From Setoptus koraiensis (taxonomy: Eukaryota; Animalia; Arthropoda), in the NCBI GenBank assembly GCA_048013815.1, contig CM106586.1, forward strand, positions 9,424,001 to 9,488,000: a stretch of 64,000 nt of DNA, in the 5' to 3' direction. The notes beneath the pieces were generated by a model that ran no database searches, was not told where the DNA came from, and worked only from the letters and a program-made list of their open reading frames with translations. This document shows, in pieces, positions 1 through 10,172 of this stretch (the stretch's first letter is position 1; the number at the start of each line of letters is the position of its first letter). Made by a program: the position numbers and the translations under genes.

Positions 1-403
1 GGAGAAAGACCCCGATTCGAGGATGTCCGACGAAATATTGGCCCATGCCCGACAAGCCCGACAGACCCGACGGGCCCGACAGGCCAGCCTTATGATGTAT
101 TGTTTGTATTGTGACAGATTGATGCCAGGTCCGTCGCGCTGCTCGTCGGGAAGTGTCACCAAGTTGCAAAGAACGCTGCGAAGAGACTATCACGAGTTGC
201 TGACGATTCACGCTATATTTAGAGCTATATTTAGACCAGCGACACGGCATAAATTCACATAAATACAAGCTGCAAGCTTGCAGTTTGAGCCTTAGTTTGT
301 GCATGCTCTCAAGGCTTTGTTCAAGTAATTTTGCTAGCAGTGATTTTCCCGAAATTTGCAGTTTTAATCCAAGTTCATCCCAGAGTCAATCTCAGAGTTG
401 CAA

Positions 404-2104
404 ATGGCAATCCCCGGGTTGCGAATGTCGATTGAGCGCCACTTGCTGGTGGCTTTGATTGCTTTCTATTACAATTGTGATTTAATTTTGGTGCACGCGG
501 GACCCGCGGCCCTAGTCCAGCTGATCAATCCCATGAGCATGGGGCTGTTTCTGGCGGACGGCGCCATGAATTTCATTGACTTTGCCAAGGAGTGGAAATT
601 GTGTCCCAGCAAGCCCGCCGAGCTGCACGAGTGGGACACGCCGGACCGGGCCGCCCACGATTGGCCCGGCATGATCTTTTTCACGCCCGACACTCAGGAA
701 GATCTAGAGATTTATTACGACAAGAACAGCGGCGGTTTTTTGGACCAGGACATCGGGAAATTCCTGGAGCGGGGCTTCAACAAAGACCTGCCCACAGTGA
801 TGTATTTGCATGCCTTTACGCAACATCCGCACAGTCGCTGGCTAGAAACGGTTCGCCAGGACTACATTGATCTGCTCAAATGGAGCAACAACCAGCCAAG
901 GATCAACCTGTTGTTCATGGATTTTAGCCACTTTGCCAAGCTCGGGTACGCGGGTTGCGCCCGTTGGGTACCGGCGCTGGGCAAAATACTGGCCCAGTTC
1001 ATTGATAAACTTGTACAGGTGAGCCAGATAGACCCGATGCAGTTGCATCTGGTGTCCTTTTCGCTGGGCAATCACATATGCGGCCTGGCCGGGCGCCTGT
1101 CTAACAGCACTATTGGGCGCATTACGGCCCTCGATCCGGCCGGCTGGTGTTTCAGCGAACGCTACAATCACGCCTACACCAAGTACGGGCTTAGGGCAAC
1201 GGACGCGTACCAGGTGGACGTGAATCATTTCGACAAGGACTTCTTGGGTAGTCGCGTACCCGTGGGCACAATAGACATATACATGAACGGGGGCGCCGCT
1301 CAGCCGGGTTGCGCAAGCGGCCGCAAGGCACTGGTGAACGCGGCGCTGGCCGTGAGCGGTCTGCGGCCGGGCAAATCGTATTGTGAGGGGCATTCGCGAG
1401 CGGCCGTTCATTCGGTGTACGCGGTGCAAGCAGAATGCCAGCAGATCGCCTACGAATGCTCGTCGTACGAGGCCTTCGAACAGGGCGAATGTGGCCAATG
1501 TGACGCAACAAACGAACAATGTTTCTCCACGAGCATATACGGAATCCAAGAGACCTGGTCCCATCGGCGTCAGGCGCCCCGTTCTTTCGCGAGCCACAAG
1601 AACATGTTTATCAAGACGGCGGCTCAGCCACCGTTTTGTGTGCAGCACTATCAGATTGTGTTGAAATTGAGGGGCCACAATGAGCCGGACGAGACAAAGA
1701 AACAGAGCCTGGTCAACAAGTTGTCGGCCGCCTTCAAGGCCAGTCAGCCGGTGCTGAAATTGTACGACACCGAATTCGAAGAATGGTTCGTCTCGGCGCC
1801 GGGCCAAATAGAGCACGAGGCCAAAGAATTGACATTCACGGCGCTTGCCATCGACTACAACAAAATGAGTGTTCGCGACACCCACAGCGCCATTCTCACT
1901 GTCAACAAGACACCCTATCAGGTGACACTGAAGAAACTGCTGGACAGCGTTGAATCCGTCGAGCTCAACTACATGAGCAATGCCGATTATGAGAAACGTC
2001 AACAGCACTCTGTGACACTGTGCCCGGACGGCATAGACAAGCAAGACGAGGGCATGCTCTGGATGAAAAAGTGCGGCGTTGAGTGGCAACCATTTGCGCC
2101 CTAA
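404..2104 (+). CDS. Secreted pancreatic-lipase-family (lipase/vitellogenin-type) alpha/beta hydrolase with probable C-terminal PLAT-like domain; intronless
   Basis: First ATG is at 404 (the ORF track starts at TTG 398; a second ATG is at 425). Hydrophobic N-terminus (LLVALIAFYY). Family motifs: YLHAF (oxyanion region, 809-817), LHLVSFSLGNHICG (nucleophile elbow, Ser at 1061-1063), RITALDPAG (Asp at 1133-1135), DAYQVDVNH, VGTIDIYMNGGAAQPGC, CEGHSRA (His at 1391-1393), AYECSSYEAFEQGEC and FIKTAAQPPFC. AATAAA at 2112-2117. Confidence 0.9.
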   Translation: MAIPGLRMSIERHLLVALIAFYYNCDLILVHAGPAALVQLINPMSMGLFLADGAMNFIDFAKEWKLCPSKPAELHEWDTPDRAAHDWPGMIFFTPDTQEDLEIYYDKNSGGFLDQDIGKFLERGFNKDLPTVMYLHAFTQHPHSRWLETVRQDYIDLLKWSNNQPRINLLFMDFSHFAKLGYAGCARWVPALGKILAQFIDKLVQVSQIDPMQLHLVSFSLGNHICGLAGRLSNSTIGRITALDPAGWCFSERYNHAYTKYGLRATDAYQVDVNHFDKDFLGSRVPVGTIDIYMNGGAAQPGCASGRKALVNAALAVSGLRPGKSYCEGHSRAAVHSVYAVQAECQQIAYECSSYEAFEQGECGQCDATNEQCFSTSIYGIQETWSHRRQAPRSFASHKNMFIKTAAQPPFCVQHYQIVLKLRGHNEPDETKKQSLVNKLSAAFKASQPVLKLYDTEFEEWFVSAPGQIEHEAKELTFTALAIDYNKMSVRDTHSAILTVNKTPYQVTLKKLLDSVESVELNYMSNADYEKRQQHSVTLCPDGIDKQDEGMLWMKKCGVEWQPFAP

Positions 2105-3281
2105 TTTGCATAATAAACAACCGACAAACAAATTCATAGATGAATCATTAGTTGGCCGCGAGACAGCTCGAAAGTTCTAGTTTCCTGATGGCCACTCCGT
2201 TGCCAAATTGCCATGTTGACACAGAATGAAAAACCGGCACAAAATTCACCGGTTCGAATTCTTAATTATGGCCGCTAATTAATTGTTCTCTGGCGATCAA
2301 TTAATTAGCGTGACAACTCGCGATTCACAAGTTACCCGTCCGGGAGCCTCTGCTACCCCGGGCAACGGGTAGCGGGGCTCCCGCCCATCGGTTCCGCTTG
2401 ATCTGCATGGATCTGCATTGATCTGCATTGCGTGAGTTTCGTGTGGGCTTCACCGCAAGTCTCACATCTGATTCGAGAGAGATCCGCCAGAGGCGCGGGC
2501 ATCTTCCAAAATGCTGCTTTTGTGCAGCCCAACAGCCGGACTGTCATTCCATTGGCTGCATTTAGTTTTTTGATTGCCTGCTGTAAATAATCGCTCCAAT
2601 AATCTCTAATCGCGATGCCTATCTCTGACGGTTCATAATCCTACAGATAGATGAAAACTATCCATGAATACTCACTTGAAGCACTCATCATAGACTCCAT
2701 GACATAGAGGGCCGAGTGGCGCCGCCCTGTCGCATTTTATTCTCAACTATTTTGAGGCCATTGAAAAATACGCGCACGCAAAACCCAGTCTGTGCAAACA
2801 TTATATAACAATGCCTGTGAATGCTGCACGGGTATCGGATCCGCCCTTTAGCGGTATTTTGCGTATAGCTGCAATGTGCAATATGACTCGCTATGTATCG
2901 TGATTGTTTAATAAGAATATAAATATTACCATCTCACCATGATTGCGTGTACATTTTTTACATTTTAGGTTGAAAGAGCCAGTACAGGTACAGGTGTTTC
3001 GGATGAGTCCCGTGTGGGCGTGTGGCCGCGCAAGCATGACATAATCGCAATACCCTGTGCACGCACTAGAGGGCTGTTTTGTGCATGTTTGAGCGCCTGT
3101 CGCAACAGCGAGAAATGTGCTCGCAAATTTAACATTCACGTTCGCCAGATTCACTACTCATCTGGCTTCTAGTATAATTTTTTTTATCGACATACTCAAT
3201 AGTTCCGGATTTGGAAAATCTTTTGCCATTATCCACCATCGTCACACATACTACTATATTAGAATTGTTACCAATACCAAA

Positions 3282-3291
3282 TTATTTTCAG
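3282..3291 (+). other. Probable 3' splice acceptor (ttattttcAG) of a 5' UTR intron immediately upstream of the DLAT start codon
   Basis: The sequence reads attattttcag|aATG, with the AG at 3290-3291, and is preceded by about 130 nt of AT-rich sequence. The donor was not identified. Confidence 0.45.
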
Positions 3292-3292
3292 A

Positions 3293-4954
3293 ATGCTTTA
3301 TTTGCGTGCAGCTAGAGAATTCAGACCTCTCCTCAATGGTTGTAGGACGTTCAAAACAGAGACTGCATCGTCACCTTCATCATCCCTAAAGGGTGTACTA
3401 GCGCAAAAAATTGTTGAACACCAGAATAAAGTCAGAGAATTTCGCGGCGCCCACGGACACAAAGTATCCGGCGATCGGGCGTACGCTGATTGGCGCGGAC
3501 TCAGGCCTTTAGTTACTCAAACATCATACCTAGATTCTTGCGAGGGCATCGCGTTTCGTGGATATTCCATACCCCAAACTGCCTCTCAACGGCGTGCACT
3601 CCATACATCGTCTGTAAAATGTGCTATTATGGTCCCGTTGCCAGCACTATCGCCCACAATGGAGAAGGGCACAATTGTGTCGTGGGAAAAGAAGGAGGGC
3701 GATCGCTTGAATGATGGTGACCTTCTAGCAGAAATCGAAACAGACAAGGCCACAATGGGCTTCGAGACGCCCGAGGAGGGCTATCTAGCTAAAATTATGA
3801 TACCTGCCGGCTCTAAGGATGTGCCTCTAGGTAAACTGTTGTGCATTATTGTCGAAGATGAGGCCGATATAGCCAAATACAAGGACTACGTTGACGATGC
3901 CACAACGTCGCCGGCACCGCCCGCCAATCAAGGTCAAACAAGTGCAACCACCAGCTCACCACCACCCGCTGCTAGTTTTACACCACCGCCACAACAACCA
4001 GTGCAACAGCAATCTTTCTCTGCTCCTCCTCCTCCTTCTACTCCTATTCAACAACAAATCAATCCGGCAACAAATGCCTCTGGCCGCGTCTTCGCCACTC
4101 CGTTTGCCAAAAAATTGGCTAGCCAACTTGGCATAACCTTGACAGGATCTGGCTCTGGACCAAATGGAAGAATATTAGCCAATGATTTGGAGTCGCTAGC
4201 TCAACAGCAACAACAAACAGCTGTAAGCAGTTATCAACAGCAGGGTGCGGCAACGGGAACTTTTAGTGATATCTCTCTAACTGGTATGAGACAAACAATT
4301 GCCAAGAGGCTGGTACTATCCAAGCAGACTGTTCCCCATTATTACCTCACCGTGAATCTCAATGTTGATGAATTAATCAAACTTAGAAAAACAGTCAATG
4401 ATATGCTAGCGGAGGACGGAGTTAAAGTTTCAATTAATGATTTTATAACTAAAGCGGCCGCTTTGGCTTGTAGGCAGGTACCCGAGGTTAACAGTGCATG
4501 GCATGATACATTCATCAGGCAGTACAACAATGTCGATGTTTGCATTGCTGTCAGCACAGACAACGGACTTATAACACCAATTGTTTTTGGGGCGGAAACA
4601 AAGGGAATCAAACAGATTAGTCTTGAAACTAAGGCCCTGGCCGAGAAGGCACGCCAAGGAAAATTGCAACCACAAGAATTTCAAGGTGGAACTTTCACAA
4701 TCAGCAATCTCGGTATGTTCAATATTGCACATTTTGCCGCAGTCATCAATCCCCCTCAAGCAGCCATTCTGGCTATAGGCTCTACGCAAAAATTAGTCGT
4801 ACCAAGCAACTTGGATGGACAAGATATGAAAGTCATAAATTCTTTGAATGTGACTCTCAGTTGTGATCACAGAGTTGTGGATGGGGCAGTTGGTGCCAAA
4901 TGGCTCGGGTGGTTCAGGCAATACATGGAGAAGCCATTCACCATGATGATATAG
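3293..4954 (+). CDS. DLAT: Dihydrolipoyllysine-residue acetyltransferase (PDH E2), mitochondrial, with an in-frame N-terminal citrate-synthase-derived segment; intronless CDS
   Basis: Single lipoyl domain (LPALSPTMEKG...EIETDKATMGFE), Pro/Gln/Ser linker, E3/E1-binding domain (VFATPFAKKLA...GSGPNGRI) and catalytic domain (MRQTIAKRL, PHYY, QGGTFTISNLGMF, LSCDHRVVDGA). Codons 31-94 match the citrate synthase N-terminus. AATAAA at 4975-4980. Confidence 0.96.
   Translation: MLYLRAAREFRPLLNGCRTFKTETASSPSSSLKGVLAQKIVEHQNKVREFRGAHGHKVSGDRAYADWRGLRPLVTQTSYLDSCEGIAFRGYSIPQTASQRRALHTSSVKCAIMVPLPALSPTMEKGTIVSWEKKEGDRLNDGDLLAEIETDKATMGFETPEEGYLAKIMIPAGSKDVPLGKLLCIIVEDEADIAKYKDYVDDATTSPAPPANQGQTSATTSSPPPAASFTPPPQQPVQQQSFSAPPPPSTPIQQQINPATNASGRVFATPFAKKLASQLGITLTGSGSGPNGRILANDLESLAQQQQQTAVSSYQQQGAATGTFSDISLTGMRQTIAKRLVLSKQTVPHYYLTVNLNVDELIKLRKTVNDMLAEDGVKVSINDFITKAAALACRQVPEVNSAWHDTFIRQYNNVDVCIAVSTDNGLITPIVFGAETKGIKQISLETKALAEKARQGKLQPQEFQGGTFTISNLGMFNIAHFAAVINPPQAAILAIGSTQKLVVPSNLDGQDMKVINSLNVTLSCDHRVVDGAVGAKWLGWFRQYMEKPFTMMI
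3383..3574 (+). other. Citrate synthase N-terminal homology segment embedded in the DLAT ORF (codons 31-94)
   Basis: SLKGVLAQKIVEHQNKVREFRGAHGHKVSGD----RAYADWRGLRPLVTQTSYLDSCEGIAFRGYSIP aligns to the metazoan CS N-terminus as recalled ([68 protein letters not shown]). About 30 of 64 residues are identical by hand, with one 4-residue gap. Confidence 0.88.
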
Positions 4955-5273
4955 AGGCAGTTTGAAAAATAGAAAATAAAAAAGTGAGATTGTTGCAAGC
5001 TGTAAAAGACCTGTGAGATCTCAACCAGCGTTTTTTTCTGTTCTCTTGATCTGAGTAATTCAAAGAAGCCAGTCTAGTTGATAGGCCTGTTACTGGCAAG
5101 TAAAAGATAGTTTTACATCTCAAATCTCGTTTGGATCATTCAAAAGATGCGCCCTCTCATTTTGTAAACAAAACGATTATTTCGTCCTTGCATGTGGATG
5201 AATTGAATCAACATCGCATCGCCAATTATTAAATATCGTCATATTTATTAATCCAAAAAACCCAACCGAGAAT

Positions 5274-5867
5274 ATGCGTCTAACACGCACATTATACAAC
5301 ACAGCATCCAGGGCTGGATACCTGGACCGGCAACGCCACAACGTTTTGGACAAAATGTTGAGAGTAAATCACGCCGGAGAGCTGGGTGCCGATCGTATCT
5401 ATTGCGGACAAAGTTATATTCTCAACAAGGATCAGACCCATGCTCCGGTCATACAAAAGATGTGGGACCAAGAGAAGGCCCACCTTGAAGAATTGGAATA
5501 CCTTAATCTTCGTCACCGAACTAGAAAGTCCCTGCTAGAACCATTTTGGTCTTTGGGTGGATTTATTCTTGGATCAGGATCGGCCATTTTCGGGCCCAAG
5601 GCTGCGATGGCTTGTACTGTTGCTGTGGAGAAAGTCATCACAGAGCATTACAATGATCAGATTCGCGATTTGATTGCCGAGGAAGATTTGAAGGACCCCG
5701 AGACAAAAGAATTACTGGATAAATTTAGTCAATTTCGTGACGATGAACAATCGCATCACGATGAGGGTATAGCGTACGATGCTCAAGCCACCCCCAACTA
5801 CGAAGCCTTCACCAAAGCCGTAGAGTTAGTGTGTCGAACGTCAATCAAAATAGCTGAAAAGATTTGA
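5274..5867 (+). CDS. COQ7: 5-demethoxyubiquinone hydroxylase (COQ7/CLK-1), mitochondrial; intronless
   Basis: Di-iron motifs: MLRVNHAGELGADRIYCGQ, MWDQEKAHL, R-x-SLLEPFW...GFILG, AMACTVAVEKVITEHYNDQIR and QFRDDEQSHHD. AATAAA at 5902-5907. Confidence 0.96.
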   Translation: MRLTRTLYNTASRAGYLDRQRHNVLDKMLRVNHAGELGADRIYCGQSYILNKDQTHAPVIQKMWDQEKAHLEELEYLNLRHRTRKSLLEPFWSLGGFILGSGSAIFGPKAAMACTVAVEKVITEHYNDQIRDLIAEEDLKDPETKELLDKFSQFRDDEQSHHDEGIAYDAQATPNYEAFTKAVELVCRTSIKIAEKI

Positions 5868-6139
5868 CGATACTGGAAAAAAAATACAGTATCACCGACA
5901 AAATAAAAACAGCATCTCATATTATGTCATCCATAGAAGCCACAGAAGCTGTAGCACAGGTGGAGCCACTCTACTCGTGGTGTACGCACCATCTATCAGC
6001 TGTGAATTTTCACTTGTTCACAACCATTGTTTATCATTATTGATGTAGATCTCACACAAGTTTACATTTATAGTTTTATCTTGGCAAAAGAAAATGTTAG
6101 CATTGTATTGTAAATCTATTAAATTCAGATTATACTCTA

Positions 6140-8014
6140 ATGGAGTCATCTCAAAATTATCGTCCGCCCCAACCGTCGACTTCGTCGCTGTCGCCTGGTG
6201 GCGACGAGAATATCGTCGCTGTTGACGATACCACCAGCAGGGACTCGTTTGACAAAAAATTTTATTCATGTCGCCTGGCCGATCCAACATTCGAATTGTT
6301 TATACTCAGCGAGGCGGGTAAACCCATCTATTCCTACACACGAAGAGAGGATATCATAACGTTGATGCCAGTTTGTCAGGCTCTCATGAGCGTCGCCAGG
6401 AGTAGCCAGGATGACACGTTACATTCAATAACAACATCGTCGAAAATTCGAATTAACTTTGCCTCACGATCGCCATTGATTATTATCGTCATCAGTAGGA
6501 TCAACTCGAGCGTAGAACCGAAGGCAGTCATTGGTCAGGTCGAAGCGCAAATAGCCTCCATATTAACCCTGAGATACCTTAAGAATTTATTCGATGAACG
6601 GCCCACATTTGACTTGAAAAGATTGCTTCAGGGTAGCGAAAAACTAATTGATTCCACAATTCATTTAACTGTCTCGATGCTGGACCATCAACAGAGACGA
6701 GCTCTGCCTCCTCCGAATTTGTTCGGACATCATTATCAGGACAGTAGCAATTATGCTGGCCATGTCAATCAAGCAAATGAGATAGATAGACAGAAAGAAA
6801 ACGAAATTGACAAACAGAATTACATGATTGCACAAAGCAATTACCTTCATCAAAATCACGCCGATCACCAATGGCCCTGGTCTCAAGCATTCCTTTGTTG
6901 TGGCAACACAGCCATCCAAAAGTCGACTAGTCAACAAGAATTAAATAGCATACTTGTACCCATAGTTGTAATGCCATCCAACAAACGAGATCAAATCAGC
7001 GCAATATTATCCTCGTCAGTTTCGGCAGGCTCCACAAAAATCATATTTTCTCTGTTATTCAAGGTGATTGGCAACAGACCAGATCAAACCATTGTCCATA
7101 CACCACAAGTACAGACTGCTGGCCCATCTGATTCAACCCATTCCAAGGATGACACGAGTGACTCGCCACCAAGTGTCAATGATGATGTGAACAATCCGAC
7201 CAAAGAAGCAACAACAAAAAATGATGATGACCTGTCTGAAAGCGTTGAGGATTCACGAACGGATAATATCAGATTTGAATTGGTGACTATCTCCAATCAT
7301 CACAGCGGTCACAAGATCTCACCATTGGATATTCACCTTTTGTTAGCTCTACTGAATGGCTCTAAGAATCAATTATTATCAGTCGAGTCTTTGTGGATGC
7401 CAGTGTGTCTACCTCGTTTCAATGCAACCGCTTTTCTTCACGCCCACATATCGTGTCTAAAGAACGGATTCTGTTTAGTGATACTAACTGTGGACAGAGA
7501 TGAATTTTCCAACTGTCAAACAATCAAACTATCAATAGAGGATAAACTAATCAAGTTGTTGAATAAATTAGAGGCCAAATCAGGCGACTCTTCAGCCTAC
7601 AATGGACTGACATCTCCCATGATCCAATCAAATTCATCGTCTAGCTCTCAGCAGAGTCAACAATCAAACTCAAAGGAATCAACGAAAGGCCAAGAATTAT
7701 TGCCTCTTAGACAGTTACAGTTTCTTTGGTACCAAACTCAACGGCAAGTACTTATGCTACAACAATCGCCAAGTTGGACATTGAGCCCGTTAGTTTATCA
7801 TATAGCCAGACGAATGTCGCAATCTAAACTGAAGACACTGTGGTTAAAAAGTGAGAACGATAAAGTGATTTTAGGTTGGCATGTTTCGACATTTCAATTG
7901 TATGCGCAGTTTGATGCCACCATCAGTCCTGGTCAAGCCTTGGAGGCCGTTCATGTGATAACCAATTGGATCAAGAAAGAGGAGGACAACTTTTCGCTTA
8001 GAGATTACAAATGA
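6140..8014 (+). CDS. MON1: Vacuolar fusion protein MON1 homolog (Mon1-Ccz1 Rab7 GEF subunit); intronless, with low-complexity insertions
   Basis: FILSEAGKPIYS, SPLIIIVIS, QIASILT, FDLKRLLQGSE, WMPVCLPRFNATAFLHAHIS and the C-terminal LGWHVSTFQLY...ITNWIKKEED match MON1 longin-domain motifs. Confidence 0.9.
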   Translation: MESSQNYRPPQPSTSSLSPGGDENIVAVDDTTSRDSFDKKFYSCRLADPTFELFILSEAGKPIYSYTRREDIITLMPVCQALMSVARSSQDDTLHSITTSSKIRINFASRSPLIIIVISRINSSVEPKAVIGQVEAQIASILTLRYLKNLFDERPTFDLKRLLQGSEKLIDSTIHLTVSMLDHQQRRALPPPNLFGHHYQDSSNYAGHVNQANEIDRQKENEIDKQNYMIAQSNYLHQNHADHQWPWSQAFLCCGNTAIQKSTSQQELNSILVPIVVMPSNKRDQISAILSSSVSAGSTKIIFSLLFKVIGNRPDQTIVHTPQVQTAGPSDSTHSKDDTSDSPPSVNDDVNNPTKEATTKNDDDLSESVEDSRTDNIRFELVTISNHHSGHKISPLDIHLLLALLNGSKNQLLSVESLWMPVCLPRFNATAFLHAHISCLKNGFCLVILTVDRDEFSNCQTIKLSIEDKLIKLLNKLEAKSGDSSAYNGLTSPMIQSNSSSSSQQSQQSNSKESTKGQELLPLRQLQFLWYQTQRQVLMLQQSPSWTLSPLVYHIARRMSQSKLKTLWLKSENDKVILGWHVSTFQLYAQFDATISPGQALEAVHVITNWIKKEEDNFSLRDYK

Positions 8015-9158: not shown

Positions 9159-10172
<1,014 letters not shown>

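What the first reader, a model, noticed from the sequence alone, without database searches (positions are those of the whole stretch)
3293..4954. Chimeric citrate synthase::PDH-E2 (DLAT) gene, with a CS N-terminal module fused in frame to the acetyl-CoA-producing subunit
Seen: one uninterrupted 553-codon ORF. Codons 1-30 look like a mitochondrial presequence (Arg-rich, nearly acid-free). Codons 31-94 align by hand to the citrate synthase N-terminus (LKxxLA...FRxxHG...YxxxRG...LVxxTSxLDxxEGIxFRGxSIP, about 30/64 identical to human CS as recalled, with a 4-aa deletion). From codon ~111 it is a complete E2. There is no in-frame ATG between codons 1 and 113, and no AG near the CS/E2 junction (3575), so the CS segment cannot be skipped by an internal start or removed cleanly by canonical splicing. 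Established: CS consumes the acetyl-CoA released by E2, and the CS catalytic His/His/Asp lie far C-terminal and are absent here. Inference: a partial CS duplication captured DLAT. It either donated a promoter and targeting peptide, or created a CS-like docking arm on the PDH core that could favour a PDH-CS metabolon. The erosion of MYGGMRG to AYADWRG suggests relaxed or changed constraint. I know of no described CS-DLAT fusion.
Basis: partly seen in the sequence, partly recalled or inferred. Interest (0 to 1): 0.88.

Follow-up and report, generated by a model that had tools for sequence, protein, structure and literature searches.

The report
Mite PDH-E2 gene with borrowed citrate-synthase head
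In this gall-mite-type genome the pyruvate dehydrogenase E2 gene has replaced its own start and upstream region with a ~530-bp copy of the front end of the citrate synthase gene, which most likely supplies only expression and mitochondrial import signals and does not build a new enzyme complex.

Summary
ORF 3293-4954 (553 codons) is uninterrupted. Residues 1-95 are homologous to the N-terminus of mitochondrial citrate synthase (CS): PDB E 1e-13, and 80% identity to a full-length mite CS. The rest is a complete single-lipoyl PDH E2, orthologous to the E2s of other eriophyoid mites.

The copied piece is DNA, about 3048-3579. It includes at least 245 nt upstream of the ATG, so the promoter and leader came along. 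It replaced only the first ~5-9 E2 codons. Contigs from two other samples bridge both junctions without mismatch, and one looks like a transcript (3112-4988).

The CS-derived mature part has lost CS constraint. It differs at 10 of 50 positions that are invariant in real CSs, carries a 4-aa deletion, and gives no confident autonomous fold. E2's own R-x-L-x-x-S processing motif survives just downstream, at residues 101-110.

Best reading: promoter plus presequence capture. The result is a long composite leader that is probably cut off. The "CS docking arm / metabolon" idea is unsupported but not excluded.

The scan found a related case earlier in this same genome: NDUFS8 also starts with a CS head (s1-325845). 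Read data here suggest that the two heads are sister copies.

The parts
3048..3292 (+). Copied CS upstream region and 5' leader (probable promoter plus 5'UTR). Homologous to L001 about 5700-6000, immediately upstream of a real mite CS gene.
   Evidence: The DNA alignment shows conserved blocks starting at window ~3048, with 83.6% identity over aligned bases and several indels. The X7 contig begins at 3112 and the X11 contig at 3195. X2 contig 2800-3207 bridges the left boundary with 0 differences.
3293..3373 (+). Codons 1-27: CS-derived mitochondrial presequence and the only usable start codon.
   Evidence: The first 31 residues (codons 1-31, slightly beyond this part) show only 2 replacements and a 1-residue indel against P0001's first 32. 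Composition of residues 1-27 is 5 K/R and 2 D/E. Pairwise dN/dS is 0.06 over codons 1-31. An in-frame stop lies just upstream, and the next in-frame Met is at codon 113.
3374..3577 (+). Codons 28-95: decaying copy of the N-terminal part of mature CS (helix A and the following strands). It has no CS catalytic residues.
   Evidence: PDB match to CS chains. 10 of 50 CS-invariant columns are changed, against 0 in P0001, p=0.002. DITV deletion. In the AF2 model only helix 30-54 is confident and the rest has pLDDT <50.
3578..3631 (+). Codons 96-113: junction and remnant of E2's own presequence. It contains the R-x-L-x-x-S-x-x-x-x motif (R101-C110, nt 3593-3622), a putative MPP plus octapeptidyl-peptidase site.
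   Evidence: CS homology ends at 3579-3581. Residues 99-113 align with the presequence tails of eriophyoid E2s. The same motif sits at the homologous place in 25 of 27 orthologs.
3632..3850 (+). Single lipoyl domain (aa 114-186) with the ETDKA lipoyl-lysine motif.
   Evidence: Pfam PF00364, E 2.2e-15. Motif found. Highly conserved against orthologs.
4088..4192 (+). Peripheral-subunit (E3/E1) binding domain, aa 266-300, flanked by P/Q/S-rich linkers (3851-4087 and 4193-4258).
   Evidence: Pfam PF02817, E 3.3e-10. Coordinates.
4259..4954 (+). Catalytic acetyltransferase core (aa 323-552) with DHRVVDG, and the TAG stop at 4952-4954.
   Evidence: Pfam PF00198, E 2.4e-79. Motif at aa ~525. Stop codon.
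4975..4988 (+). AATAAA hexamer (4975-4980) and the probable 3' end of the transcript (4988).
   Evidence: This is the only AATAAA in 4940-5100. The X7 contig ends at 4988, and X7 has no coverage beyond that point.

Best explanation
This is a 5'-module capture. A DNA-level duplicate of about 530 bp from the front of the citrate synthase gene landed at the very start of the mite's PDH E2 (DLAT) gene. The duplicate carries at least 245 nt of upstream/leader sequence, the ATG, the ~27-codon presequence and ~68 codons of mature CS. It replaced E2's own upstream region, its start codon and its first ~5-9 presequence codons.

Shown:
- The chimera is the ortholog of normal eriophyoid E2s.
- It is contiguous in independent samples.
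- It is covered by what looks like a colinear transcript.
- It has no alternative in-frame start before the lipoyl domain, so E2 must be translated from the CS ATG.

Inferred:
- The CS presequence drives import.
- The CS-derived mature segment is a tolerated, degenerating spacer.
- The retained E2 motif R101-A-L-H-T-S-S-V-K-C110 still directs cleavage: MPP after the residue following R101, then removal of an octapeptide. Mature E2 would then begin at about A111 and be ordinary.
- The CS promoter copy may also co-regulate E2 with CS.
For: - ORF and domains.
- CS homology of residues 1-95.
- The homology extends ~245 nt upstream of the ATG and stops at 3579-3581. This argues for DNA duplication that included the promoter and leader.
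- Orthologous E2s are 447-466 aa with presequences of only ~22-30 aa, and none has a CS head.
- The search restricted to the head found only true CSs among proteins of 304-968 aa.
- The window E2 sits inside the eriophyoid E2 clade (100/99 support), sister to P0009, with an end branch of 0.82 against 0.69, so it is not a degenerating extra copy.
- Both junctions are bridged with no mismatch in another study's run, X2. X7 covers only 3112-4988, ending 8 nt after the AATAAA, and is colinear across the junction. A contig from the probable RNA run X11 spans 3195-3505.
- Met occurs only at codons 1, 113 and 123.
- The head has lost 10 of 50 CS-invariant residues and has a 4-aa deletion, while the presequence keeps 29/31 residues.
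- The head has no confident fold apart from one helix.
- The R-x-[FLI]-x-x-[STG]-x4 motif is kept at the homologous site, as in 25 of 27 orthologs.
- MPP is documented to cut composite precursors at internal sites: PMC8734313 (read) and PMC5063612 (abstract seen in the listing).
- Copying of presequences from existing genes is documented in plants (PMC2631504, citing Kadowaki 1996).
Against: - No protein-level data exist, so the cleavage site and the fate of the CS segment are inferred from a motif only.
- Pairwise dN/dS of the CS-derived mature part against L001 is 0.17-0.23, not 1. Two stretches (LKGVLAQKIVEHQ and EGIAFRGYSIPQ) carry only synonymous differences, so some constraint on this segment cannot be ruled out.
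- The presequence versus mature-part contrast in nonsynonymous/synonymous counts (2/8 versus 16/20) is not statistically significant on its own.
- X7 and X11 are not certified RNA libraries (kinds '?' and 'RNA?').
- I could not search the rest of the genome for a second E2, nor read this genome's own CS. L001 probably comes from a related species, because four window proteins had no exact match in the gene collection that holds L001.
Confidence: 0.68

Rival explanations
1. Functional CS-derived arm. After removal of the ~27-residue presequence, the ~70-residue CS-derived segment stays on mature E2. Displayed on the multimeric PDH core, it recruits citrate synthase or another partner and favours acetyl-CoA hand-over.
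For: The segment has stayed in frame. Pairwise dN/dS against a real CS is below 1 (0.17-0.23), with two blocks that show only synonymous differences. Helix 30-54 is still confidently predicted. CS uses the acetyl-CoA made by E2 (textbook knowledge).
Against: In-frame maintenance is forced anyway, because the only start codon lies upstream. 10 of 50 CS-invariant positions are replaced, the YGGMRG motif is destroyed and there is a 4-aa deletion. There is no autonomous fold (pTM 0.28). An intact E2 processing motif lies between the segment and the lipoyl domain. According to an earlier scan note, the same head in shorter form (about 37 codons, presequence only) serves NDUFS8 in this genome. That points to a generic leader function.
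Confidence: 0.1
2. Redundant young chimera. This locus is an extra or decaying E2 copy, and a normal E2 elsewhere does the work.
For: I could not scan the whole genome. Chimeric duplicates are often short-lived.
Against: All E2 motifs and domains are intact. The branch length is similar to that of its sister ortholog. It is expressed according to the contig pattern. X2 contains no other E2-like contig at >=90% identity. Notes on this genome mention only a PDHX chimera, not a second E2. The synonymous divergence of the head from the related CS is large (dS ~0.58), so the gene may have survived a long time; this dating is uncertain because L001 is probably from a related species.
Confidence: 0.1
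3. Assembly or annotation artefact. The CS fragment and E2 were mis-joined, or the CS part is skipped by splicing or by a downstream transcription start.
For: The head is a repeat in this genome, and repeats can cause mis-joins. Short-read graphs do break at 3178-3210, 3288-3317 and 3379-3408.
Against: X2 (different sample and study) has a 5.2-kb contig covering 3379-5200 and a contig covering 2800-3207, both with 0 differences. X7 (third label) has 3379-4988 with 0 differences. Each has far more than 31 nt on both sides of the junctions at 3048 and 3579, and no joints or loose ends were reported. No AG lies between 3544 and 3642, and no in-frame ATG precedes codon 113. An E2 started at M113 would lack any presequence.
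Confidence: 0.04

Closest known systems
Presequence acquisition by duplication of an existing targeting signal in plants: presequences of rice rps11-1, Arabidopsis sdh3 and carrot rps10 copied from atp2, hsp70 and hsp22 (Kadowaki et al. 1996 and others, as summarised in PMC2631504)
   Same: A mitochondrial protein gene gets its N-terminal targeting sequence as a copy of the 5' part of another nuclear gene for a mitochondrial protein.
   Different: In plants the recipients were genes newly transferred from the mitochondrial genome and lacking any presequence. Here the recipient is an ancient nuclear animal gene that already had a presequence and still keeps its tail. The copy also carries upstream DNA and ~68 codons of the donor's mature enzyme.
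Composite mitochondrial precursors cut internally by MPP (yeast Arg5,6, PMC8734313; Atp25, PMC5063612)
   Same: An N-terminal presequence followed by an internal presequence-like cleavage motif, so one precursor may be cut at two places after import.
   Different: In Arg5,6 and Atp25 both products are functional proteins and the cleavage has been shown experimentally. Here the upstream piece is a non-catalytic enzyme fragment, and cleavage is only inferred from a motif.
NDUFS8 with a CS-derived head in the same genome (earlier scan note s1-325845)
   Same: Same donor gene (CS), same kind of event (upstream region, leader and first codons), same chromosome piece (~358 kb away).
   Different: The NDUFS8 copy is reported to stop at about codon 37, so it is the presequence only. 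The E2 copy runs to codon 95. I did not see the NDUFS8 sequence itself, only a second copy in run X2 that fits it.
Ordinary eriophyoid PDH E2 (e.g. NCBI KAG9510351.1 = P0009; Aceria tosichella P0111)
   Same: Single lipoyl domain, PSBD and catalytic core; 60-68% identity; same presequence-tail motif.
   Different: Those proteins are 447-466 aa with presequences of 22-30 aa. This one has ~95 extra N-terminal residues of CS origin and lacks the native first ~5-9 codons.

Membership tests
PDH E2 / 2-oxoacid dehydrogenase acyltransferase | Lipoyl domain with the lipoyl-lysine motif | tested here: met
   PF00364, E 2.2e-15, aa 114-186. ETDKA at aa ~148-152.
PDH E2 / 2-oxoacid dehydrogenase acyltransferase | Peripheral subunit-binding domain | tested here: met
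   PF02817, E 3.3e-10, aa 266-300.
PDH E2 / 2-oxoacid dehydrogenase acyltransferase | Catalytic core with the DHRxxDG histidine | tested here: met
   PF00198, E 2.4e-79, covering profile positions 3-231 of 232. DHRVVDG present.
PDH E2 / 2-oxoacid dehydrogenase acyltransferase | Orthology with the E2 of related mites, rather than PDHX or another acyltransferase | tested here: met
   The ML tree places it inside the eriophyoid E2 clade (100/99), sister to P0009 (94/78).
Citrate synthase (PF00285) | Match to the Citrate_synt domain model | tested here: not met
   No Pfam hit for aa 1-111, even at E<=10. Only the N-terminal ~95 residues are homologous.
Citrate synthase (PF00285) | Catalytic His/His/Asp and the CoA/oxaloacetate-binding regions | tested here: not met
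   CS homology stops at residue 95 (nt 3579-3581), where the sequence switches to E2. The catalytic residues lie far C-terminal in CS (established knowledge). The conserved YGGMRG is changed to YADWRG.
Presequence capture by duplication of an existing targeting signal | Identifiable donor gene whose presequence and 5' region are copied | tested here: met
   The head is 80% identical in protein and ~84-89% in DNA to the 5' end and upstream region of a real mite CS gene (L001).
Presequence capture by duplication of an existing targeting signal | The recipient depends on the captured start and presequence | tested here: met
   There is no other in-frame ATG before codon 113, which lies at the start of the lipoyl domain. 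The native first codons seen in orthologs are missing.
Presequence capture by duplication of an existing targeting signal | The captured presequence actually directs import | not testable with these tools
   This needs an import assay or localisation experiment.
Composite precursor with internal MPP processing (Arg5,6 type) | Internal presequence-like cleavage motif | tested here: met
   R101-A-L-H-T-S-S-V-K-C110 fits R-x-[FLI]-x-x-[STG]-x4 and is positionally homologous to the motif in 25 of 27 orthologs. This is a motif match only.
Composite precursor with internal MPP processing (Arg5,6 type) | Demonstrated cleavage at the internal site | not testable with these tools
   This needs N-terminomics or an in vitro MPP/Oct1 assay.

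The most novel reading that the evidence does not exclude
The ~70-residue CS-derived segment is not removed. It remains as an N-terminal arm on every E2 subunit of the PDH core, where its surviving helix (residues 30-54) and conserved blocks bind citrate synthase or another matrix partner. That would make a genetically hard-wired PDH-CS metabolon in an animal.
Probability: 0.08. Interest if true: 0.85.

Novelty: new member of a known kind. Interest (0 to 1): 0.45.

Why it matters
This is a clean, datable animal example of an essential, ancient mitochondrial enzyme gene swapping its promoter-proximal region, start codon and import signal for those of another mitochondrial gene. That process has mainly been documented for genes recently transferred to the nucleus in plants.

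Other cases are noted in the same genome: an NDUFS8 gene with a CS head, and an ACAD9 leader fused to mS38. Together they suggest that in these extremely compact, intron-poor mite genomes the 5' modules of mitochondrial genes are interchangeable cassettes. The CS cassette may place E2 and a complex I subunit under CS-like regulation.

The gene also offers a natural test substrate. It would show how the import and processing machinery handles a long composite leader that contains a piece of a folded enzyme.

Tried and rejected
- Pfam on the head alone gave no hit, so the homology had to be shown with PDB phmmer and the protein database.
- Exact-protein look-ups for the fusion, COQ7, the Mon1-like ORF and a 613-aa ORF found nothing on record. 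This genome is therefore not in that gene collection. I could not prove whether L001 (SRR33593474) is the same species or a relative.
- I searched for short proteins carrying the head, to catch NDUFS8-type chimeras in relatives, and found none.
- The exhaustive representative search with the head returned only CS fragments and gave no evidence of other CS-head fusions.
- No NDUFS8 lies next to CS in L001.
- The window contains no second copy of the head; the repeats found are only low-complexity trinucleotide and CA tracts.
- A mixed CS-plus-E2 alignment for folding head and lipoyl domain together misaligned and was dropped. The head was folded alone with the shallow alignment A3.
- The search of earlier findings does not accept coordinates outside the window.
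- Literature searches for a described CS-E2 fusion found nothing relevant.
- The presequence versus mature-part contrast in dN/dS was considered as a formal test and rejected, because the counts are too small to be significant.

Full report
**What is there.** The window carries one uninterrupted ORF, 3293-4954 (+), of 553 codons. Pfam finds a complete E2 in it: lipoyl domain aa 114-186, E3-binding domain aa 266-300 and acyltransferase core aa 323-552 (E 2.4e-79). The ETDKA lipoyl-lysine motif and the DHRVVDG catalytic motif are both present. Pfam finds nothing in the first 111 residues.

**The CS similarity is real.** phmmer against PDB sequences matches residues 4-96 to mitochondrial citrate synthase at E 1.3e-13. 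A database search restricted to the head, but allowing proteins of 304-968 aa, returned six proteins. All are full-length citrate synthases of mites. The best, P0001 (463 aa), is 80/100 identical to the head.

**Extent and nature of the copy.** P0001's gene lies on a Logan contig, fetched as L001. The DNA alignment shows that similarity is not confined to the coding part. It begins about 245 nt upstream of the ATG, near window 3048, and runs through conserved blocks in the leader. It continues through 95 codons and stops abruptly at 3579-3581.
- The upstream part is 83.6% identical over aligned bases, with several indels.
- Codons 1-31 are 89% identical.
- Codons 32-95 are 81% identical.

Because non-coding upstream DNA was copied, this was a DNA-level segmental duplication of the CS 5' module, meaning the probable promoter, the leader, the start codon, the presequence and the start of the mature enzyme. 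The limit of the transcribed part is only approximately known, since contigs start at 3112 and 3195.

**What was replaced.** Twenty-seven eriophyoid E2 orthologs are 447-497 aa long and have short native presequences. All but three (P0034, P0036, P0021) have 22-28 residues before the PALSPTM of the lipoyl domain. None has a CS head. Window residues 99-113 align with the tails of those presequences. Only the first ~5-9 native codons, including the ATG, are missing. The window's E2 lies inside the eriophyoid E2 clade (100/99 support) as sister to NCBI protein KAG9510351.1 (P0009). Its end branch is similar in length (0.82 against 0.69). It is therefore the regular ortholog and not a degenerating side copy.

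**Is it an artefact?** Several runs from other samples and studies hold this DNA. Contigs of four runs were laid on 2800-5200.
- X2 (another sample and study) has a 5.2-kb contig covering 3379-5200 and a contig covering 2800-3207, both with zero differences. Both junctions (3048 and 3579) are thus bridged with hundreds of bases on each side.
- X7 (a third label) has contigs 3112-3408 and 3379-4988, the second without any difference. It has nothing outside 3112-4988. The 3' end falls 8 nt after the only AATAAA (4975-4980). This is the pattern of a transcript, not of genomic coverage, and it is colinear across the CS/E2 junction.
- X11 and X12 ("RNA?") contribute 3195-3505 and 3699-3954.
- No joints or loose ends were reported.

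The library types of X7, X11 and X12 are not certified, so transcription of the whole unit is likely but not proven. There is no in-frame ATG between codons 1 and 113 and no AG between 3544 and 3642. The CS part therefore cannot be bypassed in any simple way.

**State of the CS-derived part.** I compared the head with six real mite CSs.
- Within residues 32-95, 50 columns are invariant in all six. The head differs at 10 of them: K45N, K48R, Q62R, G65A, G66D, M67W, K71R, T72P, E76Q and P82S. P0001 differs at none of the columns invariant in the other five (p=0.002).
- The head also lacks four residues (DITV).
- The first 31 residues vary freely between species, yet here they are 29/31 identical to P0001.
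- Pairwise dN/dS against L001 is 0.06 for codons 1-31 and 0.17-0.23 for the rest, with dS ~0.58 overall.

The counts are too small for the contrast between the two parts to be significant. L001 probably comes from a related species, since four window proteins had no exact match in the gene collection. The branch-specific rate on the head therefore cannot be fixed. Two blocks (LKGVLAQKIVEHQ and EGIAFRGYSIPQ) carry only synonymous differences. An AlphaFold model of the head, built from a shallow alignment, has mean pLDDT 57.5 and pTM 0.28. Only helix 30-54 is confident, and residues 55-95 are below 50. CS-specific constraint has clearly been lost, and no autonomous domain is evident.

**Likely mechanism.** In 25 of 27 orthologs the presequence tail contains R-x-[FLI]-x-x-[STG]-x-x-x-x, ending a few residues before the lipoyl domain. 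The fusion keeps this motif at the homologous place (R101-C110). From established knowledge of mitochondrial processing, not tested here, this is the classical two-step motif: MPP cuts two residues after the arginine, and an octapeptide is then removed. MPP is documented to cut composite precursors at internal presequence-like sites, as in Arg5,6 (PMC8734313) and Atp25 (PMC5063612).

The best reading is as follows. The CS copy provides transcription signals, the start codon and the import signal. The CS-derived mature segment is a tolerated spacer. The precursor is probably trimmed at E2's own site to give a normal mature E2. The closest precedent for the evolutionary event is presequence copying between nuclear genes in plants (PMC2631504, citing Kadowaki 1996). 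No paper describing a CS-E2 fusion was found.

It is not excluded, but several points argue against it: the erosion of CS-invariant residues, the deletion, the lack of a predicted fold and the retained processing site. An earlier scan note (s1-325845) adds that a shorter version of the same head, about 37 codons and so presequence only, starts NDUFS8 in the same genome.

**A second copy in run X2.** In run X2 the graph around the head forms a bubble. Segments 3178-3210 and 3288-3408 have twice the depth of the flanks (280 and 248 against 125-174). Between them two equally deep paths differ at 9 positions. A second copy therefore shares 3178-3408 with the E2 head at 96% identity, is identical over codons 1-38, and diverges after 3408. 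That fits the reported NDUFS8 head. This second copy is much closer to the E2 head than L001's CS is, which suggests the two heads are sister copies, either a copy of a copy or the result of gene conversion. This is inference; I could not read the NDUFS8 locus.

**Context.** Downstream lie COQ7 (5274-5867), a Mon1/Fuz-type longin protein (6140-8014) and a homeobox gene (9237-10148, minus strand). All are intron-free ORFs, in keeping with eriophyoid genome streamlining (PMC7738191).

**Verdict.** The chimeric gene is real and apparently undescribed, but its most probable meaning is ordinary: promoter and presequence replacement by partial duplication. It belongs to a wider pattern of leader swapping in this genome. 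Interest is moderate.

Noticed in passing
window 3178-3408 (run X2): A second genomic copy of the head exists in the same sample. It is identical over 3178-3210 and 3288-3408 (double depth), has 9 differences in 3211-3287, and diverges after 3408 (about codon 38). It implies that the two heads are closer to each other than to the related CS in L001.
   Followed up: partly
window 3112-3408 (runs X7 and X11): Strain variants in the leader and head: C>T at 3191 and 3243, G>A at 3349 (in frame this reads as a Gly-to-Ser change at codon 19; the tool reported only the base change), and a 1-nt deletion at 3175. The 3243 variant is shared by X7, X11 and the second copy in X2.
   Followed up: no
window 3115-3132: A 5-codon upstream ORF (ATG at 3115) lies in the copied leader, inside one of the blocks conserved with the real CS upstream region. 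It may be part of the transcript, because the X7 contig starts at 3112.
   Followed up: no
window 398-2137: Two long overlapping ORFs lie on opposite strands (568 aa on the plus strand starting with TTG, 431 aa on the minus strand starting with ATG). The minus-strand one has no Pfam match. It bounds an unusually long (1.15 kb) intergenic region upstream of the chimeric gene.
   Followed up: no
window 8500-62700, many sites: Dense (GTT/GCT)n and (CAA/CAG/GAC)n trinucleotide-type low-complexity tracts and several (CA)n microsatellites (24.8 kb, 55.0 kb, 61.2 kb). There are no transposon-like repeats and no further copy of the CS head.
   Followed up: no
L002 1379-2872 (SRR33927463): One deep-branching eriophyoid E2 (P0034, 497 aa) has a longer N-terminal leader of ~60 residues that is not CS-like, ahead of the same R-x-L-x-x-T motif. 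E2 leaders may therefore be labile in this lineage generally.
   Followed up: no
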